64,000 nt of DNA from contig NW_024704743.1 in assembly GCF_018977255.1 (NCBI RefSeq), forward strand, positions 76,260,001 through 76,324,000, written 5' to 3'. Under the pieces are notes generated by a model. That model searched no databases. It saw only the letters and a program-made list of their open reading frames with translations, and was not told where the DNA came from. Positions 8,586 through 64,000 of this stretch are shown here, one piece after another (positions within the stretch are counted from its first letter, which is position 1; the number at the start of each line of letters is the position of its first letter). Made by a program: the position numbers and the translations under genes. The stretch is from Callorhinchus milii. Taxonomy: Eukaryota.

Positions 8586-8589
8586 AATC

Positions 8590-16090: not shown

Positions 16091-17870
16091 AATCAAATAG
16101 TAGATGGAAGGTCAGAGGCAGCTGAGTGGATATTCAGCCTTATACTCTTTCTGATATTGTCGGGTTGCACATGCAATGTAACAACATTCCTTTATTCAGT
16201 GTCTACTCTAGACTTGATATTCTAATGCAACGCTGAGGTGTGCTGAATTGTTGGATGAGATATCAAACTGAGGTCCCATTTGCTTACTCAGATGGATGTT
16301 AGAGATCCCATGGCACAGTTTGAAAAGCAGTTTCTCCCAATATCCTGGTCAATGATCCCCCAGATGAAATTGGTCATTCACTTCATATTTGTGTATATAT
16401 TGGCTGCTGCATTCACCTACAAAAATACAGATACTTCATTCTACAGTAAATTCTGTTAACAACAACTTGCACTTATATAACGCCCTCCATACAGGGTAGA
16501 ATCTCAGAGCGCTTAACAATGGTGGAACCTAGTTCCTAGCCAGGGCGGGGGGTGGTGGGAGGTGGAGGAAAAAGGAAGGAAAGAAAGGCTTTCAGGCAAG
16601 ACTTGAAAAAGGGGAGAGAGGGGGCAAGGCGGAGGGATTGAGGGAGAGTGTTAAGCGCTCTACAGCGAAGTTTACAATTTGCCCTGGGATATTTCAGCAA
16701 CATGATACATTATTATATCAAATATTCTATATTACATTATTGCTGTTTGTATTTGAAGCACAGCATGGACTTATTGTAGAAAAGTTCATATAGGGTATTT
16801 TCTAAATGTAGTCCATCAATGTCTAAAGTTGCTACGGGCAGAATAACTGCCAATACTTATCTTTATTATATAGGTACAGAGTTCAGTTTGGATAGTTACA
16901 AATAATCTTCCTCTTGGCTTGGACCTGTAAATCAATCTTCCTCTGACTTCTCGTCACAGTACCATAAAGGTTAGAGTAACTAAGAGTAACTAATTTCCTT
17001 CCACCCTGAGCTTGCCTGTACGCCTTTTTCGAGGCTGTACATGGAATAATAGGAGGTTATTTGAAAGTAACTTTGCCTATAATCCGTTTGTAGCTCCAGT
17101 TGGCGAGCAGTTTGTTTGATTCCAACATTGTTTTGCTTTATATATGGTATAATTAATGCAACCTTTTTCACCAGTGCCAGCATAATACTTTATTGTTCTT
17201 TGACTTGCAGCAGAAATGTAATTTTTTTAAAAATGATTACATTTCAACAAACAACAAATTACATTTGTAGAGCGCCTTTCACATCAGGAGGACATCCTAA
17301 GGCGCTGGAAATTTCATGGCCTCTGCTGAAACAAAATAGCTGGCTTGTACTTCCCCGTCTTCTGAAAGCATTTGATCCCTTTATTTCACTCTCTAGTGTG
17401 GTACAGTCCATTGGCATCCCCTGATACGTCCCCCGAATAGCCATTATTCATGTGAGTCTCGGCAGGTAGTGTTAACAGGCTAATTGACTATGGATATTTT
17501 TTGTTGGGGGCTGGGGGGATAGAAGAGGAGCAGAAGCTGAGCATAATTCTGTCCTCATCTGAACCTGATCTCAGTACACATACCTTCCTGCAGAAATCTG
17601 GATTGAGTTGAGAATGGGAACCCTGGAAGATTTTCCTCTTCCCCAAACCTAGGGTTACTGTGGCCAGTTGTAAATGCCCATGGTTGATCACCACAGGCTT
17701 CAAATCTGCAGCAGTTGTAACTGGGCAGCATGTAAAGACTGGCAGGAACCTGAAAAGGTATATTTCAAATAATATTGGTGTTTTTGCTGACTTTCATATT
17801 CCTCTTCTTGTCCAGAAGGTGGCTGCAGTGATGCTGAGGCTGTTGTTGAGCAGCAAGAGACCCGGGCAGA

Positions 17871-18098
17871 ATGAGCAGTGTAACATCCGTTCAGGAGAAT
17901 GTCGTTGTGGTCAATAGTTTCAGTCACAGAACGTCCTTTGGTGCAGGTCATTCAGTAAATGCAAATCAGCTGGTGACCAGGTTAGCGTCGTATGAACCCA
18001 GTGAAACACGAACTATTTCTGATGTCAGAAGGACTTTCTGCTTATTTGTTACATTTGATCTTTTATTTGTCGGCTTGCTCTGGATAATAGAATTAAAT
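17871..18098 (+). CDS. STARD3NL: STARD3NL coding exon (exon 2; acceptor at 17815/17816, ATG 17871)
   Basis: MSSVTSVQ...ISDVRRTFCLFVTFDLLFVGLLWIIELN, 228 nt, donor GTAAGT at 18099. Confidence 0.96.
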
Positions 18099-21000
18099 GT
18101 AAGTATTAAATTTACGTATCAATTTTAAATATTCTACAGATTATATGTTTTATGAAGTAGAGACTTAAAATAGAATGTAAAATTTCCCCCAAATATGTAC
18201 GTTACCTGTTCAATTAACTTGATTATTAAAATGATCATCTAATTTAACTTGAAACTAAATTGTTCAAACTATAGTCAAATGTTTAGATTGAGCTAACCTC
18301 TGGCACTTTTTTTGCTTTTCAGGTGGAAGGAAACATTAAATCCAGGTTAAAAGATGAAGTTCTCCATTATAACTTTAAACATTCTTACTTTGACATATTT
18401 GTAAGTCTAGTAGTTTTCCTTAGTATCCTGAAATATTGTTTGTGCTTAATATGACATTCTGATCACTGTTCAAGTTTTAAACTTCAATGTGCTTTATTTA
18501 TTTTCACAGTTACTGGCGGTTTTTCGTTTTTTAGCGCTGATATTAGCATATGCCTTGTGCAAACTACGTCACTGGTGGGCAATAGCGGTAAGTGGCAACA
18601 CTGGAAAAATATTAGCGCTTGGGCCAAGTGACTTTAGATGGAGAAGACAACCAAGGCTAGTTCGTGAACAGGATTGCGTTACCCTGCGTGAGGGGCTATA
18701 TAAATGCAAGTTGTTATTAATGCATGGAGTTATAAGAGGTTGCCTAAAACTTCATAAATCTGGCGAAGTAAGATTTTATTCAAACCTCCTTTTTTTTCTA
18801 TTCTATGTCTTAAGATGTAGCCTTAAGATCCTGTGCCTTAAGATGCATTTACCTTTTGTATAGCCTTATCTATCTGCACTGCTCCCTTCATTGACCAGTG
18901 CATCCTGAGGTTTCCCTCAATACCATTTCAAATCTGTTTGAAAATTAATGTATTCTCATTCTCTATTCTTAGTACTAAAATATACTACTTCTGATTTTTG
19001 AACAGTGAACTACTGTTATCTAGTAGCCTAACAATGTCCCACAGGCGTTCACAATCCTTGGATAAACTGCTTTGATGAGTCATTGCAACCCTGTTTCAAT
19101 CCTTTCAAGAGAGGGACTGAATTGATCTCTGCAGGGATTCGCTGTGTCAAATGAAGCCCCAAATTATCCTTTCTAACCACTAATCTGCATGATAATCTTG
19201 TACGGCTATAAGTGACATTTAGCTTTTCCAATTTTAGATTACAACCGCCGTGACCAGTGGCTTTCTAATTGCAAAAGTAATTTTTTCAAAGGTATGTATT
19301 GCTTCTAGAACTAAAATCTGTGTGAAAGTATCAATTTCTGTCATTTGCTTTCTTAAAGTCTTTAGACTGCCTACTAAATCCTATTTATCCTATTGATCTA
19401 GCTTCTGAACCAAGGTAGTGCCTTTGCCTATTTGCTGCCAGTCATATCCTTCATACTAGCCTGGATAGAGACCTGGTTCCTCGATTTCAAGGTTTGCCAC
19501 AAGAGGCAGAGAATGAAAACAGTAAGTAAACTAACAAATTCCTTGTGCAGATGTAGGAGGAAGGATTAAAGAATTTGTAGCATTGAGATATAAAGTCAAT
19601 TTTAATTGCAAATTGTTCATTGGTGTTACTAATGATGAATTTGATGTTCATCCTCCATGGAGAATCCAGCCTGTTTTTGCAGCAACTCAGCAATAATAAT
19701 AATTATCCTTGCATTTCATATAGTGCCTTATCACATCTTCGAGATGTCTCAAACCGCTTCACAGAATATACTGTAAAGTGAATTGACTTTGTATTTTGTG
19801 GTGAAATAATTGTGGCAATGCCTGCCTAATCAATGTCCTTCGGTGAGCTGTACACAATCGTTGTTGGAATTTAGTCCCTATACAGCCATCTGCTTGGAAG
19901 AGACTCCATGGGTTCCCTCCCGATTGCTTGATATGGGTTTTAAGCCTGTGTACGTGGAAAACGCCATACTCAGCCCAACATTCAAAAAAATACAGGCTGC
20001 AAGACTCACCATCTGGGAATGATACTCTTCATGGCTGAATTCCCAACATCTAGGTCAGGGTGGTCCAACCTTTTGGCCCCTGAGGGCCGGGTGCTGATTT
20101 GAGAACTGTCTGCTGGCTGCATAGCAATATTTTTGTGTTTCCCTTCCAAAAATATAATCCGTAAGAATCATGTAAAATTCCTCTGTTTTGAATTGCATAC
20201 ATGTATTACTTAATTTTACAGTATTTTAGTTAAAATGTAAACTTTAAATAGGCAATGTGAAACCTCATACAAATTTTAAGACAATAATACACTTATCAGT
20301 GAAGTACAACAACAAGATTACATTTGTTTAACGCTTTTCAAGTTGCAAGCATGCCCCAAGGCACTGGACAGTCAGTGTTTCAGACCCAAGATGGGGGTCG
20401 GGATTGGGGAGGGTGGAGGGCAGGGGGCAAGGAGGGTGATTGAAAGCATGGTCGAAGAGGAGGGTCTTGAGATGGGTTTTGAAGGAGGCAAGGGAGGGAT
20501 GGCGGGATGGAGTTCCAGAGGCTGGGGGCAAAATGGCAGAAGGCCACTAGCTTCTCTAGCCTCTCCTCATACTCAAATCACTTGTTTCTGGTACCATCCT
20601 GGTATATCTCCTTTGCACCCTCTCCAATGCCTTGAGATCCTTCCTAAAGTGTGGTGCCCACAACTGAACACAGTCTCCAGCTGAGGCCTAACCAGTGTTT
20701 TATTGCTTCATCCAGTGTAATATATTGCTTGTCTATGTTTTCTTTGAAAGAAAGCATATGATCAAATTTAAGTCAGCATTTCTTGTAGGCTGTATGATTT
20801 TTGCAGATTTTTCTTTATGATTATAAGGAATCGGGAATAAAATAATTGTCTCCACTGGATGAGCTAGCACAAATTTAGGTTCAAATAGCATGTGTGACTG
20901 CAGTGAAATGAGTCATCAAAGTCAGAATGCTGATTTGAACTTCAGTTGTATTATTCTGAGCAAATTGTTTCTATTTTGTTCTTTTGACCTTGTACAGTAC

Positions 21001-34554: not shown

Positions 34555-34866
34555 TGGAGTCCTGTAGCTCAGTGGTTAGAGCACTCGCTTTGCAAGTGAG
34601 AGACCTGAGTTCAATTCCAGACAGGGCGAAACCTTGGGCAAGTTTCCTTACTCCACACAGAGCCTAATAATAATCCCTCCAAAGCCAAAAACAATAATAA
34701 ATTGGTCATTTTCAATCTACGACTGTTTGTGGGACATTGCTGTCCGCAATTGGCTGCCGCATTCGCCCACAAATAGTCAATTCACTTTACAGTGTGTTCT
34801 GTGAAGCGCTTTGGGACGTCCTCCCGACGTGAAAAGCGCTATATCAAATGCAAGGATTATTATTAT
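34555..34866 (+). mobile_element. tRNA-Ala-derived SINE, full length, young
   Basis: Head with TGC anticodon loop (ctcgcttTGCaagtgag), L2-type tail and (TTA)n end. Confidence 0.92.
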
Positions 34867-43155: not shown

Positions 43156-45667
43156 CTGATGAAACAAAAAAGAAGTCTCTTCAACACACTTTGAATTGCA
43201 CTTTAACACACTGCATAAGGAATTCAAAAATAATTTGTGCAGAAATGTTTCAAGGAAGTTACAAGTTAGAGGTAGGGTTAATCTAATGACAACATTTGCA
43301 TTATGACAATCTAATGAAACAAGGTTCAAACAAGATGATCATGAGACATAGACTGGAAAAAAAAATGGAAGATTTCCTGGACATTTGAGCAATTGTATTT
43401 AAACCCTATGTGTTTTTAAATTGCCATCTTTTTGCGGTTTTGAATTTGAAATGTTTATAGATGAGTCTGATGAAACTTCTGAGCTCTTACCAATGTTTCA
43501 ACACAACAACTTGCACTTATATAGCGTCTCAGAGCACTTAACAGTGGCGGAGCCTGACTTTAAGCTGGGGGTGGCGGGAGGGGGGGTGCAGCATGGGGGA
43601 TGGCTGTAATCACGATTGAAGGGGAAAGTTTCCAGGTGGGACTTAAAAAAGGGAAGAGAGGGGATAGATTGAAGGAGAGTGTTCCAGAGTTTCGGGACAT
43701 AGTGGCTGAAAGTGCGACCTCCGATGGTGGGGCGGAGGGTGCCAGGAACGAGTAGGAGGCTGGTGCCAGTCGAGTGGAGGTGCTGGGTGGTGGATTGGGA
43801 AGTGAGGAGGTTATAGAGTGAAGGGATTTGAATACGGGTGTGAGGTTCTTGGAAGTCGATCGGTTCGGTGATGGGGATCCAGTGTAGCCTGGCCAGAACT
43901 GGTGAGATGGGGGTACGGAGTTTGGTCTGGGTAAGTATGTGGCAGCTGAGTTCTGAACGAGCTGGATTTTTTGAATAGTAGAGCTGGGGAGACCGGCGAG
44001 GAGTGAGTTTGAGTAATCCAGGCAGGTGGTGACAATTGCATGCATGAGGGTTTAAGCTGCATTTGGGGGTAAGGTATGATTGCTGATCGGGACCCAGTAG
44101 AAACCAACAAGTTTCAAAACCTTTTTCTTTGTTTTTGACCCTTGAAAAATCTTGCATTTGATATAACATTAAAATCTGTCAAAGTGCTTCATAGGTAATT
44201 ACTGTCAAGTGTAGTGTATTTAGAGGGAAGTTATGAGGAAGATCAATACCTTTGTCTTCATTCCGTGTCCCATTACAGCTTTTAGACTTTGCATTAGTTG
44301 AGGGTTCACTTTCTGTTTTCGAATGAATAAGGGAATCAATTACAACAATAACCATAACAAGAACATAAATTAAAATCAGTTAAATCCGATCGTTTCTCAA
44401 ACCAATAAGGGGATAACTGATCCTTCTTTGAACACCCCTGTTCTATTTTATCAAGTCAAACAAAAAATAGAAATAGGACATACAAAATCTTATAGTCATA
44501 CAAAAACAGCTGGGCTTGAAATTTACAAGCCAACAATTGGTGATGTTACGTTTTGTTTATTTCGCTTGGATTTTTAAAACAAATGAATGCAGTTAAAAAA
44601 AAGTCCATACATTGCCACAACATGATTTTACTACCTGACCAGGAGTTAACTTTTCAATTAGTTTTCAATGATACAAATCGTGGCAATAAACCTAAAGGAG
44701 CGCTTTGTGTTTTGTTTTGCAGCAATTGCTGAGTTTCCTGGCTGTTTTGCTCATAATTAACTAATCCATTTTTAAAAAATATAGGTATTAAAAAAGGTGT
44801 TAAAAATACAGGTATTTGATGTCATTGCTTCTATTGCTTTTTTTAAACTAAATTGCGTTTCCTCATTACAAAATCAACACTGTATTATGAAGAACTGGCC
44901 TTAAATGAAATGCATTTCGTTAACTTCATATCAGAAAAGGAAGAGCACAGTGACAAATTCAGTGCTGGATATCTGGTTTAAAAAATCTCAAGTAAATTAT
45001 TCGTAAACCTGGGACAATATATTGTTTTGACGAAAGGTCATCGCCCTGAAACTTCAGCTCACTTTCCTCTCTCTGTAGATGCTGCCTGACCTGCTGAGTG
45101 CTCCCAGCGACTTCTGTTTTTATTTCAGATTTCCAGCCTCTGCAGCACGTTACCTTTTGTTTACAATATATATATTCCAATTTATATTAAACACTAGTTA
45201 AATAATAGCTATTTGTAATGAAGCTCTGTGCGTTAAGTGAAACATATCGACCTGAACACAGCGATCAATAGTTCTGATGTCAAAATACAGTGCAGGTTTC
45301 CCCTGACAAAAGGCAATACAAGTTACAAACGCAATAGAAACACGAACAGTACCTTTGGGAGATGTCTTCTTCCCGTTGGCGTGGACTTCTATGTTATCTT
45401 TTGAAGATTCATGTTGCACCCCGCATATGACTTTAGAATTTTTCCACTGAAGTTGTGTGACATTAAAACGGCTAATCACATAAGATGTTTCACCATTCTC
45501 CTTCTCAACGGGATCTGTTTCCCATTTACTCTGCTCGCCATCGGGTTTCCAGTAAACTTTGATAACATCGGGGTAAAAGCCAGTGATCAGGCAGACGAGC
45601 AGAAATTCAGTGTCGCTCTTGTCATTCTCGCGGAAAACTTGTATTTTAGGCGTTTCTGGTGACCTGT
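43019..45667 (-). CDS. TRGC: T-cell receptor gamma constant region, 3 exons (45667-45353, 44312-44250, 43155-43019)
   Basis: Ig-C1 exon with [18 protein letters not shown] and VICGVQHE. Connecting-peptide exon [20 protein letters not shown] has the interchain Cys. TM/cytoplasmic exon [36 protein letters not shown] has the gamma-type LLKSVVY motif. All junctions are phase 1 and GT-AG. The STARD3NL adjacency matches TRG synteny. Confidence 0.95.
43500..44100 (-). mobile_element. L2-clade LINE 3' fragment (TRGC intron 2)
   Basis: [31 protein letters not shown] and [10 protein letters not shown], plus the L2 tail. Confidence 0.88.
44250..44312 (-). CDS. TRGC: TRGC exon 2 (connecting peptide)
   Basis: 63 nt, aaacag|aa agt gaa...gac aaa g|gtattg, containing Cys and an NGT sequon. 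Confidence 0.88.
45020..45147 (+). mobile_element. Penelope-type short repeat (TRGC intron 1)
   Basis: ttgacgaaaggtcatcgccctgaaac...gatgctgcctgacctgctgag...cagatttccagc. Confidence 0.65.
45353..45667 (-). CDS. TRGC: TRGC exon 1 (Ig C1-set domain)
   Basis: 315 nt, acceptor ttttttag|ac agg tca and donor aaag|gtactg. Confidence 0.96.
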
Positions 45668-46291: not shown

Positions 46292-46613
46292 TAATAATAA
46301 ATAATAATCCTTGCATTTGATATAGCGCTTTTCACGTCTTCAAGACGTCTCAAAGCACTTCACAGAATATACTGTAAAGTGAATTGACTGTATATTTGTG
46401 GGCGAACGCGACAGCCAATTGCGCACAGCAGTGACCCACAAACAGTCGTAGATTGAAAATGACCAATTTATTATTGTTTTTGGTTTTGGAGGGATTATTA
46501 TTAGGTTCTGTGTGGAGTAAGGAAACTTGCCCAAGGTTTTGCCCTGTCTGGGATTGAACTCAGGTCTCTCGCTTGCAAAGCGAGTACTCTAACCACTGAG
46601 CTACAGGACTCCA
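46292..46613 (-). mobile_element. tRNA-Ala-derived SINE, full length, young (J-C intron)
   Basis: Near-identical reverse complement of the copies at 47066 and 54167. Confidence 0.92.
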
Positions 46614-46881
46614 CCGAGCGAGAATACTTTAGTGTTTTACCCCACGAATCGCCGGGATCAGCGCGGTCTCTGGCCACGACACTGACCGGGTGAGCTCAAG
46701 CCCGGGTTCAGAGCCAAACACGTTTCTGTCCTTACAAGTGACTACAAGCACCGTATTGTACAAGTGACAAGACCCTCACCACAACTACTCGCGGGGAGGG
46801 TTTGAAATACATACACATCTCCCTTTACTGTCAACAAATTATATATGTATTATAGTCAACATCGCCTGCTGCAGAACTCAC

Positions 46882-46960
46882 CAGTAACTAGAAGTCTGGT
46901 CCCAGCACCGAAGATCTTTCTGTCGGATACTGCGCAGTGTTAAAGCGCCGCACAAGAACC
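46882..46960 (-). other. TRGJ: J-gamma segment (C-proximal; VSDRKIFGAGTRLLVT) + 12-RSS with defective heptamer
   Basis: Coding 46882-46932, donor GTGAGT. RSS read outward: CGCAGTG-12-ACAAGAACC (CAC changed to CGC). Confidence 0.88.
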
Positions 46961-47065
46961 CGCGCACCTGCCCTACACCCCGAGCTCACTGCAGCCTCAC
47001 ACAGAGCTGCGCTTCCAAGTTCAATTCCCATTCCCGTTGGAAAACGGGAGAAGTAACCCTTACTG

Positions 47066-47390
47066 TGGAGTCCTGTAGCTCAGTGGTTAGAGCACTCGCT
47101 TTGCAAGTGAGAGACCTGTGTTCAATTCCAGACAGAGGGCGAAACCTTGGGCAAGTTTCCTTACTTCACACAGAGCCTAATAATAGTCCCTCCAAAACCA
47201 AAAACAATAATAAATTGGTCATTTTCAATCTACGACTGTTTGTGGGACATTGCTGTGCGCAATTGGCTGCCGCGTTCGCCCACAAATATACAGTCAATTC
47301 ACTTTACAGTGTGTTCTGTGAAGCGCTTTGGGACGTCCTCCCGACGTGAAAAGCGCTGTATCAAATGCAAGGATTATTATTATTATTATG
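47066..47390 (+). mobile_element. tRNA-Ala-derived SINE, full length, young (inside the J array)
   Basis: Same head, body and tail as above, ending in (TTA)n. Confidence 0.92.
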
Positions 47391-47454
47391 ATTACTGTTA
47401 CTGTAATGCGATCGCTATTTTCTTCGTTACTCGGTCGCAAACGGACTCACTCAC

Positions 47455-47528
47455 CAGTAACCACCAGTTTTGTCCCGGTTCCGAAAGTGTAATATCCCCC
47501 CACAGTGCTAAAGGGACGCGCAGTAACT
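47455..47528 (-). other. TRGJ: J-gamma segment (GGYYTFGTGTKLVVT) + 12-RSS
   Basis: Coding 47455-47500, donor GTGAGT, RSS CACAGTG-12-GCAGTAACT. Confidence 0.93.
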
Positions 47529-47604
47529 ATTTCTACACATTCCTCTACAAAACTAACTAAACACTCCTCTACATTTTTGTCAAAAGCTCCGATCTGAGAC
47601 TTAC

Positions 47605-47679
47605 CTGTTACAGTCAACTTTGTCCCAGCGCCCAAGACTTTAGTTGTTGACCACAGCGCTACAGTACTGTACAGTAACT
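47605..47679 (-). other. TRGJ: J-gamma segment with non-canonical LGAG motif (STTKVLGAGTKLTVT) + 12-RSS
   Basis: Coding 47605-47651, donor GTAAGT, RSS CACAGCG-12-ACAGTAACT. Confidence 0.85.
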
Positions 47680-47866
47680 CGGTAAATAAACCAGGATCGC
47701 GGCTGCCTGACTGCAGACCAGAGCTGTGACTGCTGCTGTAGGTCAGTCAGTCGGTCAGTCAGTCCCTTGAGCTATTATGGGATCTTCAGACAATATAGAT
47801 GTGACCCCCAATAACAGCGAACACTGGATATTTCTCATCTTACTGCATTACTGAATAGAAACCTCC

Positions 47867-47913
47867 CAGTAACAAGGAGTTTAGTTCCTGTGCCAATAAT
47901 CTTCGATCATAGC
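47867..47913 (-). pseudogene. J-gamma pseudosegment (L*SKIIGTGTKLLVT)
   Basis: In-frame TGA, Phe replaced by Ile, donor GGAGGT instead of GT, heptamer decayed to TACAGTA. Confidence 0.75.
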
Positions 47914-48092
47914 TACAGTACAGCGCAACAGCTATAAACCTGCACCGCCCCGGTGATCTATGTCTCTACCTATGGCTTTCCAGATGTTTCAAGTTTTCTA
48001 CACTAAATATTGTGCAAGAACTAATACAGCCTTCCCCCTCTCTAGAGCATTCCCAAGGATATATGTACAAAGGCTTTCACAACGCATCTTTT

Positions 48093-48151
48093 TCGCAACA
48101 AGGAATTTAGATCCGGCGCCAACTATATTCCGGTCATTATAATACAACAAC
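48093..48151 (-). pseudogene. Degenerate J relic (NDRNIVGAGSKFLVA)
   Basis: xGxG-x-K-x-L-V spacing retained and CACAGCA adjacent at 48152, but no donor site. Confidence 0.45.
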
Positions 48152-48403
48152 CACAGCAAAATTGCATTTGTAAAGCAAATGTATCCTCGACACAGAATAA
48201 TAATCAATGTCTCACGCATGGTGCCATGCAGGGCGCTATAATAATTATAAAGCCACAGCGATGAATTGACTGTCTGTCTTCCACGTCTGTTAATATTTTG
48301 CTACACTACATACGGTGCAAATCGACGATAAGAACTATAACTGTCCCCTCTATAACAGCGTACACATATGCAACATCCACACTCACGCCGTGTATTCATT
48401 TAC

Positions 48404-48476
48404 CTGTAACGATGAGCTTAGTTCCAGTGCCGAACACTTTGTAACCTGCACAGTGTTAAGGCGCAGTACAATAACT
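48404..48476 (-). other. TRGJ: J-gamma segment (GYKVFGTGTKLIVT) + 12-RSS
   Basis: Coding 48404-48448, donor GTAAAT, RSS CACAGTG-12-ACAATAACT. Confidence 0.93.
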
Positions 48477-48625
48477 ATAGTGTTACAGCGCTGGAGCGAT
48501 TGGCTGATCAACAGGTCTTTTAATATTTTCCTACACCAAATACTGGGCCATCGCTGATAAGAGCTGCCCCCACGAATACTCTCAGATAGCAGCAGAGTAG
48601 ATCCTCGCAATTTACCTTTCCTTAC

Positions 48626-48709
48626 CTGTAACAAGGAGTTTAGTCCCAGTGCCGAATACCATCCTTCTGCCTCCAGCTGTACACCGTGTTACAGCGCAAT
48701 ACATTAAGT
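48626..48709 (-). other. TRGJ: J-gamma segment (TAGGRRMVFGTGTKLLVT) + 12-RSS
   Basis: Coding 48626-48681, donor GTAAGG, RSS CACCGTG-12-ACATTAAGT. Confidence 0.9.
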
Positions 48710-48867
48710 ATGGGAGACAGGACCCTGTCGCCACTGAATGTTCTCAGGCTGTTTGGACACTTTGGACACCAAACCATGTGTTGTGCCATCACTAATAATA
48801 ACTAATCCCCTAAAAACATGCACACAATATGTAACGGTGTTAACACATAACACAGTGACTCTCTTAC

Positions 48868-48952
48868 CGGTGACAATGAGTTTAGTTCCAGTGCCAAATA
48901 TCTTCCGCGAGTAACCAGTGGAAGCACAGTGTTACAGTGCCATACAATAAAT
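48868..48952 (-). other. TRGJ: J-gamma segment (STGYSRKIFGTGTKLIVT) + 12-RSS
   Basis: Coding 48868-48924, donor GTAAGA, RSS CACAGTG-12-ACAATAAAT. Confidence 0.93.
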
Positions 48953-49098
48953 ATGGAAGATACGACCCAGTAACTGCTGAATGATCTCCAGACCTTTTGA
49001 TATTTTCCCAAACCACATGCCGTGTCATCACTAACACGAACTAATGACTGCCCCACAATAACCTCCCGGCACATTGTACCTGCACCACAGAGACTTAC

Positions 49099-49187
49099 CG
49101 GTGACAAGGAGTTCAGTTCCAGTGCCGAATATTTGCTTTCCATAATATCCAGAGGAGTCCACGGTGTTACAGTGCAATACATTAACT
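49099..49187 (-). other. TRGJ: J-gamma segment (DSSGYYGKQIFGTGTELLVT) + 12-RSS
   Basis: Coding 49099-49159, donor GTAAGT, RSS CACGGTG-12-ACATTAACT. Confidence 0.91.
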
Positions 49188-49311
49188 AAAGGAAAGACAC
49201 TATTCTCTGCGGATCTTTCAATATTTTCTAACACCACACGATATGCCATCACTAGTAACTGCTATGACCCCTTCCTCGCTCTTTCCTTCTCAAATATTCC
49301 CGCATTGATAA

Positions 49312-49421
49312 TCTAACGAAGGGTTGATTCACTTCCCTTTCTCCATAGATGCTGCCTGACCTGCTGAGTGTTCCCAGCGACTTCTGTTTTTGTTTCAGAT
49401 TTCCAGCATCTGCAGTATTTT
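49312..49421 (+). mobile_element. Penelope-type short repeat inside the J array
   Basis: gatgctgcctgacctgctgagtgttcccagcgacttctg...cagatttccagcatctgcag; the core is partly deleted. Confidence 0.7.
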
Positions 49422-49442
49422 ACGTTTCATTGATATTCTTAC

Positions 49443-49534
49443 CTGTTACAAGCAGTTTAGTCCCAGTGCCGAATATTTTCTTATCAGCATATCCATATTC
49501 GTTTAGCACAGTGTTACAATGTCAGACTAAAACC
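49443..49534 (-). other. TRGJ: J-gamma segment (LNEYGYADKKIFGTGTKLLVT) + 12-RSS
   Basis: Coding 49443-49506, donor GTAAGA, RSS CACAGTG-12-ACTAAAACC. Confidence 0.93.
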
Positions 49535-49817
49535 TCATAGCTCACACATTGCTAAGATGTTCCAGCACCAACAACAGGTCACAGCTCAATACCTCTGCAC
49601 TCCAACCCTCAGTTTGGATGTTGTAGTCAAGCGGAACCTGTATAATCTCCCCTGAAACTACCATAATTTCACAAGAGAGTTACAGATCCGCCTTCAACAA
49701 GCCTGAACTCTCGGTGTTATAGTGTCACTGCTGTCTTAGAAATCCACCAATATCGGATTAACGAACCAACAAAAAGGTAGTCAGTCGTAAAGTAAAGTGT
49801 ACTGTATAGAAGCTTAC

Positions 49818-49892
49818 CTGTAACTATCAGTTTAGTTCCTCCGCCGAACACCTTACCAGACGCCCACAGTGGTACAATGCTATACAATAAAT
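49818..49892 (-). other. TRGJ: J-gamma segment (ASGKVFGGGTKLIVT) + 12-RSS
   Basis: Coding 49818-49864, donor GTAAGC, RSS CACAGTG-12-ACAATAAAT. Confidence 0.93.
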
Positions 49893-49926
49893 GCACGGCA
49901 AGCAGCACCCCTGACCCAGCACTCAC

Positions 49927-49975
49927 CAGTAACACCAGGTTTAGTTCCAGTGTCACCGATCTTCCATGAATTCAA
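49927..49975 (-). pseudogene. J-gamma pseudosegment (SWKIGDTGTKPGVT)
   Basis: Donor GTGAGT is intact but FGxG has decayed and no recognisable RSS is present. Confidence 0.6.
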
Positions 49976-50274
49976 CCTGGAGACTCATTACTTACAGTAA
50001 CAAAGCAGTACGTGCTGCTAACTCGGTGACATTCCCATTCAGTACCTATCCCCCACACCCCACTCCCACCTTATTCAGCTCCTCACCTCACCCCCATCCC
50101 AACCACAGTTAGGGACCCAGGCAGTTAATTACACAAAGCCCTTTGAGATATCTCCATGAGGTGAAGTACATGGAAACTGTTATTGCGGTCCACGCCAAAT
50201 GCAGATAACCATTTAAAATAAGCTCACAGAAATCCGCAAGTAACGGGAAAGTTGTCCAATAGCCGCAGCCTTAC

Positions 50275-50359
50275 CTGTTACAATGAGTTTAGTTCCAGTG
50301 CCGAAATACTTGATCCATGCACCCGAGGTATCACAGTGTTATATCACCTCACAAGAACT
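50275..50359 (-). other. TRGJ: J-gamma segment (TSGAWIKYFGTGTKLIVT) + 12-RSS
   Basis: Coding 50275-50331, donor GTAAGG, RSS CACAGTG-12-ACAAGAACT. The W-I-K-x-F pattern resembles mammalian J-gamma segments. Confidence 0.94.
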
Positions 50360-50499
50360 AACCACAATCCAGTGATGCCACTAACACAGCAGCTTACTTT
50401 CCTTACAGACCTCACTGAGAGCTTGGAAGGGTAAACTCCAACAATTGGCAGTTGGCAATTGCCTGAACCAAAGCATCATCATTTGCACAGCAAACTCCC

Positions 50500-50540
50500 C
50501 TGTAACGATGAGCTTAATTCCAAACTTTGCACTTTTTCAA
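50500..50540 (-). pseudogene. J-gamma relic (AKFGIKLIVT)
   Basis: FG followed by a short deletion then KLIVT. The donor has mutated to GGGAGT. Confidence 0.55.
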
Positions 50541-50823
50541 CCAAACGTCAAAAGTAACTGGTGTTCATAGCTACCTGTATTATCAACCTTGTTTTTAATC
50601 TAATTTTCCAGCTCTTTCCCCATATCCCTTAATATTTTTAATATTTAAATTGTTCAACTGCTCATCCAAATATTTAATTGGCCGGGAATCCAACCCCAAC
50701 CAACGGGAAAGGCAACGTTACACCTTACATTCATGAACCAGGATCTTCCTAGTTATGGGTTGCTAAACACGCCACACTTACACGTAAACACATGAACATT
50801 GTTCCTCAAACCAAATAGCTTAC

Positions 50824-50909
50824 CTGTAACAATAAGTTTAGTTCCAGGACCGAATATCTTTCTCCATACACCTCCAGTTACCACAATATTACATCACCAT
50901 ACAATAACT
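50824..50909 (-). other. TRGJ: J-gamma segment (V-proximal; VTGGVWRKIFGPGTKLIVT) + 12-RSS
   Basis: Coding 50824-50881, donor GTAAGC, RSS CACAATA-12-ACAATAACT. Confidence 0.9.
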
Positions 50910-54166: not shown

Positions 54167-54487
54167 TGGAGTCCTGTAGCTCAGTGGTTAGAGCACTCGC
54201 TTTGCAAGTGAGAGACCTGAGTTCAGTTCCAGGCAGGGCGAAACTTTGGGCAAGTTTCCTTACTCCACACGCCTAATAATAATCCCTCCAAAACCCAAAA
54301 ACAATAATAAATTGGTCATTTTCAATCTACGACTGTTTGTGGGACATTGCTGTGCGCAATTGGCTGCCGCGTTCGCCCACAAATATACAGTCAATTCACT
54401 TTACAGTGTGTTCTGTGAAGCGCTTTGGGACGTCCTCCCGACGTGAAAAGCGCTATATCAAATGCAAGGATTATTATTATTATTATT
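54167..54487 (+). mobile_element. tRNA-Ala-derived SINE, full length, young
   Basis: Same head, body and tail as above. Confidence 0.92.
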
Positions 54488-56062: not shown

Positions 56063-56382
56063 TAATAAATAATAATAATAATCCTTGCATTTGATATAGT
56101 GCTTTTCACGTCTTCTCAACGTCTCAAAGCGATTCACAGAATAGACTGTAAAGTGAATTGACCGTATATTTGTGGGCGAAACGCGGCAGCCAATTGCCCA
56201 CAGCAGTGTCCCACAAACAGTCGTGGATCGAAAATGACCAATTTATTATTGCATTGTTTTGAAGGGATTATTATTAGGCGTGTGGAGTAAAAAAACTTGC
56301 CCAAGTTTCGCCCTGCCTGGAATTGAACTTAGGTGTCTCGCTTGCAAGGCGAGTGCTCTAACCACTGAGCTACAGAACTCCA
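56063..56382 (-). mobile_element. tRNA-Ala-derived SINE, full length; a truncated head of a second copy follows at 56405-56437 (+)
   Basis: Reverse complement of the family consensus seen in this window. Confidence 0.9.
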
Positions 56383-58325
56383 CAACCCAATGATGACCAA
56401 TTTGTGGAGTCCTGTAGCTCAGTGGTTAGAGCACTCGGTCAAGTGGGGCTCTGGATCCACTGAAATTGAAGGGAACTTAAAAATTCTGATCCAGCAGCTG
56501 ACTGCTGCATTTCAGGTCTTAGGTAATAATAGCTGATGTAAAACAGCCAAGGTTTTAAATCAAAACTGTACAGCATTTATTTTAGAGCATATATTATTTG
56601 TGAGCAGCACTAGCTCTGGATAATTCATATCTAATACTTCCACTACTTTTGCGTCTGAACGAAGCATTTGCTTTCAGCGCCTTGGGATGTCCTCCCAATG
56701 TGAAAAGGCTGTATACACATGTAATTTTGTTGTTGTTGTTTTAAATATGAAACATTTACACTTACTTTATCCACTCAGACTGCCAACGTTAGGCAGGACT
56801 TGGAGTGGGTCAAACAGTTTTGGCTCCAAAATGCCAAGTTTCAAAGTTAGGTGGATAGGTGCTTGCTTTAGGCAAATATAAGTACTGCCAAAGATTGCAT
56901 TTCTCACAACAATATTCATGTCAAGTGATTTTGTTAAATCAATGGCATTTCTTACCTAACCATCGGGGAAACAACTTGCTTTCTGTGTTATGGGGAAATG
57001 GTGTCCTGTCATTTAGTCAAATCTGTTACCTTTCATGCGTTAGCCTAGCTTTTCAGGTGTCTCAAAGCCCTAGTCTGCTTTTGTTTCACGTGTTTGTTAG
57101 GGTTTACATAGCTGATGACATGCTAACTAAAATAAAGTTGGCATTAGTTTTTCGGAATGGGAATTTTCTTCAGTTTGAAACAGACCTGGTGAGGTTTCAA
57201 GATATGGTCGATCTGATAAACAAAGATTTAGTTTCCACAACACCACCCACTTAACAGACTTCAGTGTCTCCCCAATTCACTGGTGATGTTTTAAACTGGC
57301 CAAACGGATCAAACCTATCCCAGTTCCATTAATCCTGGACACAGTATCACCACACAATGTAACTTCCAAACCCCAGATCTGCAGAATCATACCAATGCCA
57401 ATCTCAGACTATCTCAGACCAAGGTACAGTTACTGTAGTTTCAATACCGATAGGATTACATGACAGGTTTTGGGAGGGGAGTAAGATAACCTTGGCACAC
57501 TTATATAAAGGATGATAATTCAATTACAATATTATCACATTGGCTGTACAAAGTATGATCAGATAGCTGAGCATCAAACTTGGAATTTGTAAAGCGTTAG
57601 GTTGTATGCCTTGTGGCTCTCTTAGCTTCACATTCAGTAAAATGTGTAAAATGTTTGCTGCGAAGTGGAGGTAAGCATGATCTCTTTGGGGGTCACTAGC
57701 TCTGAGTAGGTATGCCATGGTGAACCCACTGCATTGTTTATTATTTACCAATTTATCTGTCTTAATGGTGAGACTTGGAGGAATAGAGGTATAGAGCTCT
57801 AAAGAACCAAATCATAATGAACAGTGTAGTCCTAGTTGGACATGGATTGTGAAACTTAACAGGTTTTGGTTCATCACAATTTTATAGTTCAAAATGAATT
57901 AAGTAAAATGTATGAAGGCAAATCAAAAGTTATGAATTTGATTGTCATGGGAATTTTGTGTTCTGATTCTTGCCTTAATGGCTCAAGAAGCAAGCTTTTG
58001 ATGACAAAGGCAAGTATTTACAGGGAACAGAGAAAGGGTTCAAGAGTGTGAACTCTGCAGCAGGTCTGCAGACCAAAGTGTATTATCAAATAGTCCACAG
58101 ATTGAAAAGGAAACACAATAAGCAATGTTATAGAATTAAGATTATAGGTGGATATCTGTAAATTGGACAGGTGGGAAAATGATGCTGGACAAAGGTGGCT
58201 TGCCACAACACTGACAGAACCTAGGACCAGGGAACACTGAGCAACATAACAATAATAATAACAATAATAATGGTTCTGAAGCTGAAAAATAGGGTTTATG
58301 GCAGCTTCCAGGAAATACCAATGGT

Positions 58326-59605: not shown

Positions 59606-60088
59606 GGTTTTTGTATGGGTTTCCTGTAGTTTTCTGTCATTGTGAAGACCATAAAGCACAGTAATAGACCCCAGTATCAGCCTCCCTGGTGTCTAGTATT
59701 ATAAGATTGCAGGATTTGGTTTGTTCAACTTTTTCGACAAAGAATCTGGCTTTAAAAGCAGAATCAATCTCCTTCTTTTGTTGATTCTGAAAATAGAGTA
59801 TCCACTGGAGCTTTTTATCTGCAGATTTACGATACCAGTGAACAAAATCAGTATTTAAAGTTTTGCTGTCAATAATACAGGGAATCTGCACAGTTTTGTT
59901 CAGTTTACTGGTCAATGATAATCGAGGCTGACTCAAGGCAACAGATCCATCTGAAAGAGAAACACACATAATATTATTTTAAAATACAAAATAATAATAA
60001 GAAAATAAAATGATTAACAGGAAAAAATGATCTTAAAACACTAACATAAAAAAGAGGCGATCAAAATTACGGCAAAATAAATCTTCAT
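59606..60088 (-). CDS. TRGV: T-cell receptor gamma variable gene (J-proximal intact V): leader 60088-60046, V exon 59950-59645, 23-RSS 59644-59606
   Basis: Leader MKIYFAVILIASFL|gttagt. V exon GSVALSQPRLS...IPC...FVHWYRK...DTGVYYCALWS. RSS CACAATG-23-ACAAAAACC. Confidence 0.95.
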
Positions 60089-61127: not shown

Positions 61128-61594
61128 GGTTTTTGTTAAGCGTATGTGTGGTTCTTCAGCACTGTGGAATCCCAGTAGGCGCAGTAATAGGTGGCAGAAT
61201 CGACCTCTAAGACGTTGTTAATAACAAGGACCTGCTGGTTACTGCTGGGCGCCTCTGTTGAGAACCTGCCAGGGGTCTCCTCGTCCAGCTGAGCTTTGGA
61301 GTTAGCCCGATAAAGTATCCGTGTTATCGGTTTGTTGGGTTTAGACTGGTACCAGTGAACAGTCTCTGAGCTCTTGATATCGCATTTCATTCTGATCGTT
61401 CTCCCCGCAGGTTTAGTAAACGATCTTGGGTACTGATTCACTTTCTGAGCAAAACTTCCATCTGTAAACAGAACAAACGAGAGTGAAAGCAAAACGTTGT
61501 GGTTTCCCACTGTGAAGAGACGACCGGCAAGTAAATCTTTCAGGCACTTACGGAGCAAAACTATCGTCACGAACAGACTGTAAAGTAGGAACAT
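61128..61594 (-). CDS. TRGV: T-cell receptor gamma variable gene: leader 61594-61552, V exon 61461-61167, 23-RSS 61166-61128
   Basis: Leader MFLLYSLFVTIVLL|gtaagt. V exon GSFAQKVNQYP...MKC...VHWYQSK...DSATYYCAYWD. Perfect RSS CACAGTG-23-ACAAAAACC. Confidence 0.96.
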
Positions 61595-64000
61595 TATGCG
61601 GAGCTCGGTGCTGCCTTGGATTAACGAGGTGAATCTTCCCATCCGCTGGATCAGATCTTCATCAACTGGAAAGGAAATGACTCGCAGATCTGTAACCAAT
61701 CCATGTTAAGAAGGTCCCATGTCCCGCCTCTGTAAAATGGTGGGCGTGGTTGCCCTCTTCAATTGATTGCTTAGAGCTTTTTATAAGGTATATAAGGTCC
61801 ATTTATTTCTGAATAAAGTCTTCATAATTATTTCATTCTATGTTCGCTACTCGAATAACTGGCCTGTTGAAATTGAGTAAAGCAAACATGGGAGTGTGCC
61901 TTGGTGTACTGCTGGTTACTCTCCAAGCCTTGGCTCTTACCAATCTGCTCCTAATACTTTCTGGAATTAGGCAACTCCAGGGAGAGAGTGCGCATTTCAT
62001 TCCAACAATCTTTCTCTGGGATTTCCATGTGTTGGTGGTAAGCGTAGAATTCTCAGGTTGGTTTGGATACTTTTAAGCATGGTGTTGGGTTTCTGCATGT
62101 GTCAGACACCCAGCTGACCCAAAAAAGGCAAACTTTCCTGTACCAAGAAATCTGTAGTTTAATAATAATGAAAAGCTACTCAGTTATTACATCCCTTATT
62201 ATCTCCTTGTTGATGTAAATTAAATTTTTAGTTTAATATATTACAATATTTATCTTATTCTTAGTTTTTGTGTTTATTTTCCGGTCAACCGGATGGTCTA
62301 ACACATGTGGAAACTCATCGCCATGTGTCTGGTTTAGTTTCCACATCTTCACAAATCTCTTGAGTGAAAAAAAGGTTGCAGTTTTCATTTTCTTACTTCT
62401 GATTTTAAGGTTCTGTCCTATCTAACCTGTCAGTTCCTTTCATTATTTTAAATCCCTCAATTTTATTGGTAGCAATATTTCTAAAGGAGGAGGAAAAGGG
62501 GAAATCCATTGAAGAGAGGATGATGGAAATTAAAAGTTTGCTTTAGCCCAGGAAAATGAATACAGGCTTTAACTATGTGCATCTGTCAAGATTGCCAGTG
62601 CCTAAGGTGATACTGATTGAATGTCTCAGTAGGGAGGTGACTGACACAGTGCTCTGCAAGGCTGAAAGATTCAACCAGACGGGCCAATAATCCCCCCAAA
62701 TAAAATTTATCATTCATTTCAGGGCTGCTTGTGGTCATTGCTGTACACAAATTGGCTGCCATGTTGCCTACAAAATGCACATTCACTTTTTCTGGACTGT
62801 TAACCCGGCAGTAAACAGGCCAAATGCTGTTGACAAACGACATCAAATTGCATTTATAAAGTGTCCTTCACACAGGATAGCATCTCAGAGGGCTTTACAA
62901 TGGCTGAGCTGGGAAGAAAGGGGCGGTGACCGTAGGCACAGTCGAAGAGTAAATTCTGTAGCTCAGATCTCAAGATGGGCAAAGAGGGAGTGAGGCGGAG
63001 TGATTGAGGCATGGAGTTCTAGAGGTTCGGGGTGAAGTGGCTGAAAGCATGGCTGCTGATGGTGTAGGGGTCTAAGGATGTGCAGAAGGGTGGAGCTAAC
63101 TGACCAAAGGGGGTAGAGGAGAGTGGTGTGAACATGTTGGGTAGGGAGATGCCTGAGCGTGAAGAGATTTGTAGGTGTGAGTAAGGATCTTGAAATTGAC
63201 TAATTCAATGCCATATAGTTCTGAAGAGTTCTGAAGAGGTACTTGACACTTGAATGGTTTCCTGAATATATGGGCACAACAAACATGACATTTCATATCA
63301 GTCTCGAATGATCACATCAAAATTGTTTAGATATTTTACATTTTGTCTCTAATATTTCAAAACTTAAAAAAAAGTTAATAACTACGTCCAATTTGCCCAT
63401 TGGTGAGTGAACTTTCAACCGTTTTGAACCCACTCTCCAGAACTCTATCCCTCCCTCTCTGAGTTCCTCTGCTTTGCCCCCCTCCCACCTTCAACCCCCA
63501 CCCTCACTTGGCTCCCACTCCCAGCTCAGGTGCCCATCCAGCGCTGTCAATGTGCTTTGGGATGTCCTCCCAACGTGAAAGGCACTACATAAATATAAAC
63601 TATTATTGTATTGTATCAAGACCTATCTTTTCAACCTTGCATTTGGCCAACAAAATAAATGTTTCTTGATTTAATATTTCTTGATTTATTGGCTACCCAG
63701 TGAAAACAAGCAGTTAAAACAGAGGATGGGATTGTTGCTTGTCTTGTAATGGCACACAATGCAGTTAAACTTTTTTTGATAGTATATGTTGTGTGTATAG
63801 GATGTGATATTTGTATCCGTAATTATTCTGGGTTTGATTTGATGCCTACAAGATATAATAATAATCCTTGCATTTGATATAGCACCTTTACGTCATCAAA
63901 ACATCTCAAAGTGCTTCACAGGATATACTGTAAAGTGGATTGACTGTGTATTTTGTGAGCAAAATGCGGCAGCCAGTGTGCACAGCAGTGTCCCACAAAC

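What the first reader, a model, noticed from the sequence alone, without database searches (positions are those of the whole stretch)
46882..50909. Expanded J-gamma array: 11 open J segments plus about 4 relics in 4 kb in front of a single C-gamma
The sequence shows 11 stop-free J segments, each with a GT donor and a 12-RSS-like signal, and about 4 decayed copies. From recalled literature, the sandbar shark TRG locus was described with three J segments and human TRG has five. If that holds, this lineage has moved much of its gamma-chain combinatorial diversity into J, an alpha-like strategy (inference).
Basis: partly seen in the sequence, partly recalled or inferred. Interest (0 to 1): 0.75.

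Follow-up and report, generated by a model that had tools for sequence, protein, structure and literature searches.

The report
Elephant shark TCR-gamma J-segment cluster
This is the joining-segment cluster of the elephant shark T-cell receptor gamma gene: 11 intact-looking J segments and 4 decayed ones ahead of one constant gene, about two to five times as many as in the six sharks and rays compared, but an ordinary kind of locus.

Summary
On the minus strand, 50909-46882 holds 11 stop-free J segments. Each has an FGxGT-type FR4 (one reads LGAGT), a phase-1 GT donor and an upstream 12-bp-spacer RSS. There are also 4 decayed copies, and nothing J-like elsewhere in the 64 kb (chance expectation 0). 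The window is the Callorhinchus milii TRG locus: two V-gamma with 23-RSS, the J cluster, one three-exon C-gamma 1.2 kb downstream, and a convergent STARD3NL-like gene, as in tetrapods. One database transcript (P0001) is a true V1-J2-C join.

Orthologous loci fetched here carry fewer J segments: manta 2, catshark 3, zebra shark 4, whale shark 4, great white 6, basking shark 6. The literature gives sandbar shark 3, zebrafish 7, opossum 7 and alligator 9. So 11 is the largest single J-C cluster I could find, but it extends a known range.

The array is old. Flanks have diverged except in a four-unit block of about 235 bp. FR4 is under purifying selection (pN/pS 0.19).

The "alpha-like strategy" reading is only partly supported. 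V number beyond the window is unknown, only one J has transcript evidence, and two J segments carry predicted defects (J9 lacks the FR4 phenylalanine; J11 has a weakened heptamer). Verdict: a real, modestly notable new member of a known kind.

The parts
50824..50909 (-). J-gamma 1 with 12-RSS (nonamer AGTTATTGT, heptamer TATTGTG); coding 50881-50824, VTGGVWRKIFGPGTKLIVT; GT donor
50275..50359 (-). J-gamma 2 with 12-RSS (AGTTCTTGT / CACTGTG); coding 50331-50275, TSGAWIKYFGTGTKLIVT; the only J with transcript evidence (P0001)
49818..49892 (-). J-gamma 3 with 12-RSS (ATTTATTGT / CACTGTG); coding 49864-49818, ASGKVFGGGTKLIVT
49443..49534 (-). J-gamma 4 with 12-RSS (GGTTTTAGT / CACTGTG); coding 49506-49443, LNEYGYADKKIFGTGTKLLVT (the longest J)
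49099..49187 (-). J-gamma 5 with 12-RSS (AGTTAATGT / CACCGTG); coding 49159-49099, DSSGYYGKQIFGTGTELLVT
48868..48952 (-). J-gamma 6 with 12-RSS (ATTTATTGT / CACTGTG); coding 48924-48868, STGYSRKIFGTGTKLIVT
48626..48709 (-). J-gamma 7 with 12-RSS (ACTTAATGT / CACGGTG); coding 48681-48626, TAGGRRMVFGTGTKLLVT
48404..48476 (-). J-gamma 8 with 12-RSS (AGTTATTGT / CACTGTG); coding 48448-48404, GYKVFGTGTKLIVT. J5-J8 form a tandem block of about 235-bp units (48400-49188)
47605..47679 (-). J-gamma 9 with 12-RSS (AGTTACTGT / CGCTGTG); coding 47651-47605, STTKVLGAGTKLTVT. Open, but Leu replaces the canonical Phe of FGXG
47455..47528 (-). J-gamma 10 with 12-RSS (AGTTACTGC / CACTGTG); coding 47500-47455, GGYYTFGTGTKLVVT
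46882..46960 (-). J-gamma 11 with 12-RSS (GGTTCTTGT / CACTGCG); coding 46932-46882, VSDRKIFGAGTRLLVT. The heptamer is altered at its second position from the coding end; bracketed by an inverted SINE pair
50494..50522 (-). J relic A: AKFG-IKLIVTG. Lacks codons within the GxGT core, donor GT changed to GG, no RSS, stop upstream
49921..49963 (-). J relic B: KIGDTGTKPGVT. FG and L replaced, GT donor kept, no heptamer, stops upstream
48097..48156 (-). J relic C: NIVGAGSKFLVAKK. No donor, F changed to V, RSS decayed
47866..47927 (-). J relic D: SKIIGTGTKLLVTGR. F changed to I, donor GG, in-frame stops, heptamer decayed
45353..45667 (-). C-gamma exon 1 (C1-set Ig domain). The acceptor ag|AC completes the codon G+AC = Asp with the last base of every J
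44250..44312 (-). C-gamma exon 2 (connecting peptide with the interchain Cys, ...KSCNGT...)
   Evidence: matches P0001
43019..43155 (-). C-gamma exon 3 (transmembrane [16 protein letters not shown] plus a short cytoplasmic tail and the stop)
59606..60088 (-). V-gamma 1: leader exon from 60088, V exon ending 59645 (YYCALWS), 23-RSS CACAATG-23-ACAAAAACC at 59644-59606
61128..61705 (-). V-gamma 2: leader plus V exon ending 61167 (YYCAYWDS), 23-RSS CACAGTG-23-ACAAAAACC at 61166-61128
46321..46614 (-). tRNA-Ala(TGC)-headed SINE copy in the J11-C intron
47065..47360 (+). tRNA-Ala(TGC)-headed SINE copy between J10 and J11, inverted relative to the 46321-46614 copy (92% identity)
17850..18860 (+). Two exons encoding the start of a MENTAL domain (STARD3NL-like gene), convergent with TRG. 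This marks the 3' border of the locus

Best explanation
[quoted passage not shown] Gene order on the minus strand is V-gamma (at least 2, each with a 23-RSS), then 11 J-gamma (each with a 12-RSS), then one three-exon C-gamma, then a convergent STARD3NL-like gene.

How it works. In developing T cells RAG would pair a V 23-RSS with one J 12-RSS and delete the DNA between them, since V and J share orientation. The chosen J supplies the C-terminal part of CDR3 (4 to 11 germline residues ahead of the Phe) and FR4. Its phase-1 GT donor is spliced to C exon 1. J segments left downstream of a first join remain available for secondary V-to-J joins.

How it arose. The array grew by old tandem duplications of J units in the holocephalan lineage. 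Most copies were kept under purifying selection and four decayed.

Shown: the anatomy, the 12/23 compatibility, the splice phase, the identity as gamma, one rearranged transcript using J2, the larger number than in six elasmobranch loci, and the selection signature.

Inferred: that most of the 11 are used, and that secondary rearrangement occurs.
For: - Anatomy: 11 full J units and 4 partial ones, and nothing else J-like in 64 kb. Chance expectation is 0.
- 12/23 rule: all J spacers are 12 bp. Both V segments carry heptamer-23-ACAAAAACC.
- Splice phase: every J ends ...ACN G|GT, and C exon 1 starts ag|AC. Transcript P0001 reads ...KLIVT-D-RSPE....
- Identity as gamma: the composite V-J-C query hits Callorhinchus proteins at 84-98% identity and nurse-shark 'T-cell receptor gamma chain' at E 1e-46. 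The profile search retrieves bird, mammal and turtle TCR-gamma chains. Pfam finds C1-set and V-set domains. The transmembrane motif [16 protein letters not shown] is shared with shark TCR-gamma. A MENTAL-domain gene lies convergent at the 3' end, as described for alligator and mammals (PMC7349638).
- Use: P0001 maps to the V1 leader, the V1 exon, J2 (exact DTSGAWIKYFGTGTKLIVT) and the C exons, with a non-germline Trp at the junction.
- Selection: among the 11 FR4 regions pS = 0.56 and pN = 0.107, ratio 0.19. Gly2, Gly4, Thr5, Leu7, Val9 and Thr10 are invariant although each uses 2-4 different codons.
- Age and mode: only 48400-49188 (J5-J8) keeps unit-length similarity (66-69% over about 340 bp). 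Other J segments share only the RSS plus J.
- Comparison: J counts are manta 2, catshark 3, zebra shark 4, whale shark 4, great white 6 and basking shark 6.
Against: - Transcript evidence exists for one J only. A dedicated J+C search found no further transcripts.
- J9 has Leu in place of the FR4 Phe. J11 has a heptamer altered at a position that is normally invariant. J1's heptamer has two mismatches. The functional count may therefore be 8-10 rather than 11.
- No other holocephalan genome could be examined, so the expansion cannot be dated or assigned to Callorhinchus rather than to all chimaeras.
- The pN/pS figure pools 55 non-independent pairs over only 10 codons.
Confidence: 0.85

Rival explanations
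1. The array is mostly an unused leftover. Only a few J segments (for example J2 and J4) are recombined and expressed. The rest are open reading frames that have not yet decayed, so the effective J-gamma repertoire is no larger than in sharks.
For: Only J2 is seen in a transcript, and no others were recoverable. J9 (Leu for Phe) and J11 (CACTGCG heptamer) have predicted defects. Four copies have already decayed, so turnover does occur in this array.
Against: Synonymous divergence between copies is near saturation (pS 0.56), yet FR4 residues, GT donors, 12-bp spacers and the heptamer GTG ends are kept in 10-11 copies. The four true relics show what neglect looks like: lost donors, lost Phe/Gly, stops and no RSS. 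Intergenic DNA has diverged beyond recognition around most J segments, so the intact copies have survived a long time.
Confidence: 0.12
2. The cluster is composite. J9-J11 are the remnant of a second ancestral J-C (or V-J-C) cassette whose C gene was lost, fused to the J1-J8 cluster. It would then not be one cluster grown by local duplication.
For: J9-J11 are set apart by an 800-bp gap holding two relics. They use different FR4 codons (GGG ACA AAR, and gtgag donors in J10 and J11) and sit on long branches. Salmon and mammals show that cassette duplication happens at TRG (PMC7349638).
Against: There is no trace of a second C exon anywhere in the window (tblastn). The J tree over 85 columns is too weak to define groups: only 3 of 29 inner branches are well supported.
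Confidence: 0.08
3. The count is inflated by an assembly artefact, that is, falsely duplicated tandem units.
For: Tandem arrays are prone to mis-assembly in general.
Against: No two J units are near-identical. The best pairwise matches are 92-95% over only 24-38 bp, and flanks are unique. Every J encodes a different CDR3 part. The window has no N.
Confidence: 0.02

Closest known systems
Chinese alligator TRG locus (18 TRGV, nine TRGJ, one TRGC, AMPH/STARD3NL borders; PMC7349638)
   Same: Translocon layout with many J segments in one cluster ahead of a single three-exon C. STARD3NL lies inverted at the 3' end.
   Different: It has 9 J segments against 11 open plus 4 relics here. It has many V segments (18), whereas only 2 are visible in this window and the total is unknown. 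The two lineages are very distant, so the expansions are independent.
Zebrafish TRG (7 TRGV, 7 TRGJ, 1 TRGC; PMC10322711) and opossum TRG (9 V, 7 J, 1 C; PMC7349638)
   Same: A single J-C cluster with a multi-J array at sub-kilobase to kilobase spacing.
   Different: Fewer J segments.
Sandbar shark TRG (5 V, 3 J, 1 C; Chen et al. 2009 as summarised in PMC7349638), and the elasmobranch loci scanned here
   Same: Same gene, same V-J-C translocon, same 12-RSS on J, and shared J types such as TSGxWxKxF and YAD(K/V)K(V/I)F.
   Different: Elasmobranchs have 2-6 J segments in a conserved A-B-C-D order, with an A-B duplication in lamniform sharks. The elephant shark has 11, most of them not assignable to those four groups.
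TRA J array (up to about 100 J depending on species; PMC5931798)
   Same: A VJ-type locus in which unused downstream J segments could in principle allow successive rearrangements.
   Different: A far smaller scale: 11 J in 4 kb. By my recollection of the human locus, TRA holds about 61 J across about 70 kb. No evidence here for secondary rearrangement, a TEA-like promoter or an embedded delta locus.

Membership tests
TCR-gamma joining (TRGJ) gene segments | FR4 motif F-G-X-G followed by T-K/R-L-x-V-T in an open frame | tested here: met
   10 of 11 have FGxGT and J9 has LGAGT. All are stop-free from heptamer to donor.
TCR-gamma joining (TRGJ) gene segments | Upstream RSS with a 12-bp spacer, complementary to a 23-RSS on V-gamma | tested here: met
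   All 11 have nonamer-12-heptamer. V1 and V2 have heptamer-23-ACAAAAACC. The J11 heptamer CACTGCG and the J1 heptamer TATTGTG are sub-consensus.
TCR-gamma joining (TRGJ) gene segments | Splice donor in phase 1, compatible with the acceptor of C exon 1 | tested here: met
   G|GT(A/G)AG in all 11. The acceptor is ag|AC AGG. The junction is read as T-D-R in transcript P0001.
TCR-gamma joining (TRGJ) gene segments | Located between V-gamma and a C gene that is TCR-gamma by homology, in the same orientation | tested here: met
   V at 59.6 and 61.2 kb, J at 50.9-46.9 kb, C at 45.7-43.0 kb, all on the minus strand. C matches nurse-shark TCR-gamma and tetrapod TCR-gamma chains.
TCR-gamma joining (TRGJ) gene segments | Conserved synteny: STARD3NL in inverted orientation at the 3' border of TRG | tested here: met
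   MENTAL-domain exons lie on the plus strand at 17.9-18.9 kb. The literature description is in PMC7349638. STARD3NL versus STARD3 was not discriminated.
TCR-gamma joining (TRGJ) gene segments | Found joined to V-gamma in rearranged transcripts | tested here: inconclusive
   Met for J2 only (P0001). No transcripts were recoverable for the other ten. The Ensembl models that use J4 read through the germline V RSS, so they are not rearranged.
TRA-like J array (the 'alpha-like strategy') | Dozens of J segments spread over tens of kilobases | tested here: not met
   11 J in 4.0 kb, mean spacing 394 bp.
TRA-like J array (the 'alpha-like strategy') | J number dominates combinatorial diversity (J well above V), and successive V-J rearrangements occur | not testable with these tools
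   Only 2 V lie in the window, which ends at 64000. The total V count and any secondary rearrangement need the rest of the locus and thymocyte DNA or RNA.

The most novel reading that the evidence does not exclude
Holocephalans diversify gamma chains mainly through J. A small V-gamma set is combined with about 10 functional J segments that carry germline CDR3 stretches of very different length (4-11 residues). The compact array also permits repeated V-to-J replacement (receptor editing) at TRG. In addition, several of these J types (WIKYF, YADxK, YYK) are pan-gnathostome and about 450 million years old, which would imply that J-encoded CDR3-gamma residues contact conserved ligands.
Probability: 0.18. 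Interest if true: 0.55.

Novelty: new member of a known kind. Interest (0 to 1): 0.3.

Why it matters
TRG loci are usually described as having few J segments. Published single J-C clusters range from 3 (sandbar shark, chicken) to 9 (alligator). A cluster of 11 open J segments in a chimaera, the sister group of sharks and rays, shows three things. J number at TRG is evolutionarily labile even among cartilaginous fishes. The sandbar-shark '3 J' is not the ancestral chondrichthyan state by default. And J-encoded CDR3-gamma length classes can be multiplied by local duplication. It also provides annotated coordinates for repertoire work in a species often used as the slow-evolving reference gnathostome. 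It does not change how V(D)J recombination or gamma-delta T cells are understood.

Tried and rejected
- Tandem Repeats Finder on 46-52 kb found no J-period array. The copies are too diverged, so self-blastn and nhmmer were needed.
- A third database search with J + C exon 1, meant to recover partial transcripts using other J segments, returned only one Ensembl model without a J. J usage could therefore not be tested beyond J2.
- The Ensembl/UniProt Callorhinchus models P0002, P0004 and P0009 seem to show J4 use. P0004 reads through the germline V2 RSS (…YWDSTVLKNHTY-KIFG…), so these were rejected as germline-spliced predictions, not rearrangements.
- The supplement of the elephant-shark genome paper (PMC3964593, Supplementary Note XI), which may already describe this locus, is not held. 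Chen et al. 2009 (PMC2689029) is not held either. Their content was taken second-hand from PMC7349638.
- Exact-protein look-ups failed for Heptranchias, Heterodontus and Mustelus. No squalomorph, horn shark or second carcharhiniform locus was obtained, and no second holocephalan was available.
- The maximum-likelihood tree of 32 J units (85 columns) resolves the four elasmobranch orthogroups but not the placement of most elephant-shark J segments. I did not rely on it for orthology.
- Rejected: not gamma (C homology and synteny say otherwise), and an assembly artefact (all units are distinct).

Full report
**What is in the sequence**

All features of interest lie on the minus strand. A six-frame scan for [F/W/L]GxG[T/S] finds eleven hits between 50854 and 46912 and no J-like context elsewhere. 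For each hit I read out the 75 bases upstream and the bases downstream and then parsed them with a scanner. Every one shows four features:

- A nonamer with 5-8 of 9 matches to GGTTTTTGT.
- A spacer of exactly 12 bp.
- A heptamer with 5-7 of 7 matches to CACTGTG, abutting an open coding stretch of 45-64 nt.
- FR4 ending ...GTN ACN G, followed directly by GT(A/G)AG.

An nhmmer profile built from the eleven returns those eleven at full length (E 1e-14 to 1e-21). It also returns four partial matches, at 50522-50494, 49963-49921, 48156-48097 and 47927-47866, and nothing else above noise in 64 kb. The four partial copies have lost the donor, the Phe/Gly residues and/or the RSS, and carry stops nearby. 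A degenerate FR4+donor pattern with up to three mismatches gives 12 sites, all here and all on the minus strand, against 0.00 expected from shuffles. So the observation, 11 open plus about 4 relics in 4.0 kb, is confirmed.

Three of the 11 are sub-canonical:

- J9 has TTG (Leu) in place of the FR4 Phe.
- J11 has heptamer CACTGCG, a change at the second position from the coding end, which is normally invariant.
- J1 has heptamer TATTGTG.

**What locus this is**

C-gamma lies 1.2 kb downstream of J11.

- Exon 1 is a C1-set Ig exon at 45667-45353 with acceptor ag|AC.
- Exon 2 is a 63-nt connecting-peptide exon at 44312-44250.
- Exon 3 is a transmembrane/cytoplasmic exon at 43155-43019.

Two V exons lie upstream and end YYCALWS (59645) and YYCAYWDS (61167). 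Each is followed by a heptamer, a 23-bp spacer and a perfect ACAAAAACC nonamer. The 12/23 rule is therefore met for direct, deletional V-to-J joining.

A composite V-J-C query hits Callorhinchus milii proteins at 84-98% identity. It also hits 'T-cell receptor gamma chain [Ginglymostoma cirratum]' and gamma chains of birds, mammals and frogs. A profile search widens this to hundreds of TCR-gamma chains. The transmembrane motif [16 protein letters not shown] is shared with shark gamma chains.

MENTAL-domain exons on the plus strand at 17.9-18.9 kb place a STARD3NL-like gene convergent with TRG. The same 3' border, in the same inverted orientation, is described for alligator and mammals (PMC7349638). 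Only one C-gamma exon set is in the window.

**Evidence of use**

P0001 (308 aa) maps to the V1 leader (60088-60047), the V1 exon, J2 and the C exons. Its junction reads YYCALWS-W-DTSGAWIKYFGTGTKLIVT-DRSPE. That is the full germline J2 plus a non-germline Trp, so it is a true rearrangement.

The Ensembl models that appear to use J4 read through the germline V RSS and are prediction artefacts. A search aimed at J-C fragments found no further transcripts. Use of the other ten J segments is therefore inferred, not shown.

**Indirect evidence that the copies are maintained**

- Across the eleven FR4 regions, pooled pairwise pS is 0.56 and pN is 0.107, a ratio of 0.19. Gly2, Gly4, Thr5, Leu7, Val9 and Thr10 are invariant although each is written with two to four different codons. 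The pairs are not independent and the region is only 10 codons, so this is supportive rather than decisive.
- Self-comparison shows that only J5-J8 (48400-49188) keep similarity over whole units of about 235 bp (66-69% identity). All other J segments share only the 40-95 bp of RSS plus J.
- The array is therefore old. Conserved RSS, frames and donors within otherwise unrecognisable flanks, contrasted with four clearly decayed copies, argue that most copies have been under selection.

**Comparison with other cartilaginous fishes**

NCBI gene models for TCR-gamma (mostly misnamed 'immunoglobulin light chain-like') gave me the orthologous loci with their introns and 10-kb flanks. The same scanner and the nhmmer profile were applied to each.

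| Species | J-gamma count |
|---|---|
| Manta (Mobula birostris) | 2 |
| Catshark (Scyliorhinus canicula) | 3 |
| Zebra shark (Stegostoma tigrinum) | 4 |
| Whale shark (Rhincodon typus) | 4 |
| Great white (Carcharodon carcharias) | 6 |
| Basking shark (Cetorhinus maximus) | 6 |
| Elephant shark (this window) | 11 open + 4 relics |

Assembly gaps (N) in two of these loci lie in the V regions, not in the J clusters, and were left alone.

Sharks share an ordered set of four J types: A (..YAD(K/V)KVF), B (TSGSWRKIF..GSGTRLIVS), C (SGKKLF) and D (..QF). Catshark lacks D, and lamniforms have duplicated the A-B pair.

In the literature the sandbar shark has 3 TRGJ, chicken 3, duck 5, human 5 with two C genes, opossum 7 and alligator 9 (PMC7349638). 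Zebrafish has 7 (PMC10322711). A text search for TRGJ8 to TRGJ12 found no larger single cluster. Eleven is thus the largest J array ahead of one TRGC that I could document, and two to five times the elasmobranch numbers.

It remains a quantitative extension. Giorgetti et al. already note that V and J numbers at TRG are usually much lower than at TRA and 'not consistent across species'.

The literature recollection is right and the expansion relative to sharks is real. The claim that this lineage has shifted gamma diversity into J, 'alpha-like', is not established, for four reasons:

- The window ends 2.3 kb beyond V2, so the V count is unknown.
- Only one J is seen expressed.
- Two J segments have predicted defects.
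- The scale is not alpha-like: 11 J at a mean spacing of 394 bp, against TRA arrays with up to about 100 J depending on species (PMC5931798).

What can fairly be said is that the array offers germline CDR3 contributions from 4 residues (GYKV-F) to 11 (LNEYGYADKKI-F). It also leaves downstream J segments available for secondary joins after a first rearrangement. Both points are inference.

**Rivals**

- Mostly unused open frames. This is possible for a minority of the J segments but fits poorly with the selection signature.
- A composite origin for J9-J11 from a lost cassette. This is suggested only by their distinct codon usage and an 800-bp gap with two relics; there is no C remnant.
- An assembly artefact. 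This is excluded in practice, because no two units are alike beyond short stretches.

**Novelty and score**

This is a correctly read, real feature in a public genome. Its kind, a TRGJ cluster, is textbook; its size is at the top of the known range. The 2014 genome paper's supplement may already list it, and I could not read that supplement. I rate it a new member of a known kind, with interest of about 0.3.

**Seen in passing**

The most interesting side observation is that several J types seem conserved across jawed vertebrates. Elephant-shark J2 shares AWIKYFGTGTKLIV with bird gamma chains, and close variants occur in turtle, platypus, frog, a teleost, hare and horn shark.

Noticed in passing
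window 50331-50275 (J2), 49506-49443 (J4), 48448-48404 (J8); proteins P0011, P0012, P0014, P0023, P0028, P0041, P0050, P0067, P0079: J-gamma 'types' look conserved across jawed vertebrates, including CDR3-encoding residues. J2 (TSGAWIKYFGTGTKLIVT) shares AWIKYFGTGTKLIV with birds and has close variants in turtle, platypus, frog, a teleost, hare and horn shark. J4 (YADKKIF) resembles shark YADVKVF and bird DADVKIF. J8 and J5 (GYKVF, GYYGKQIF) resemble bird GYYYKVF. From memory, human TRGJP1/JP2 and TRGJ1/J2 fall in the first and third types.
   Followed up: partly
window 46321-46614 (-) and 47065-47360 (+); also 34554-34843, 54167-54457, 56095-56383: A SINE of about 296 bp with a tRNA-Ala(TGC)-like head has five full copies and about 15 fragments in the window. 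Two copies, 92% identical and inverted, bracket J11, the J with the weakened heptamer.
   Followed up: partly
L001 49184-51339, L002 42650-44779, L005 41155-42364, L006 84536-85749, L003 13801-14313: Sharks share an ordered four-type J-gamma set (A-B-C-D). The great white and basking shark carry a duplicated A-B pair, nearly identical within each species and shared by both, so it is a lamniform duplication. The catshark lacks type D.
   Followed up: partly
window 17850-18125 and 18450-18860 (+): Exons encoding the start of a MENTAL domain (STARD3NL-like) lie convergent with TRG. The TRG-STARD3NL synteny and orientation known from alligator and mammals therefore extends to a chimaera.
   Followed up: partly
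P0001 versus window 59972-59646 and 45667-45353: The rearranged transcript differs from the germline by K to Q in V1 FR3, T to M near the start of C exon 1, and an extra Lys in C exon 1 (VEKEKNGE against VEKENGE). These could be allelic variants or, for the V change, somatic hypermutation as reported for shark gamma chains.
   Followed up: no
window 15037-15756 (-), 23292-24137 (+): Reverse-transcriptase (RVT_1) ORF fragments of LINE-type retroelements lie between STARD3NL and TRGC.
   Followed up: no
window 8000-10000: A GC-rich island (61% GC against about 40% elsewhere) carries long proline/alanine-rich low-complexity ORFs on both strands. It may be a CpG island or first exon of a neighbouring gene.
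   Followed up: no
window 49864-49818 (J3): J3's 5' coding part contains an internal GGTAAG, a consensus splice-donor look-alike 16 nt upstream of the Phe codon. It could compete with the true donor if it is retained after joining.
   Followed up: no
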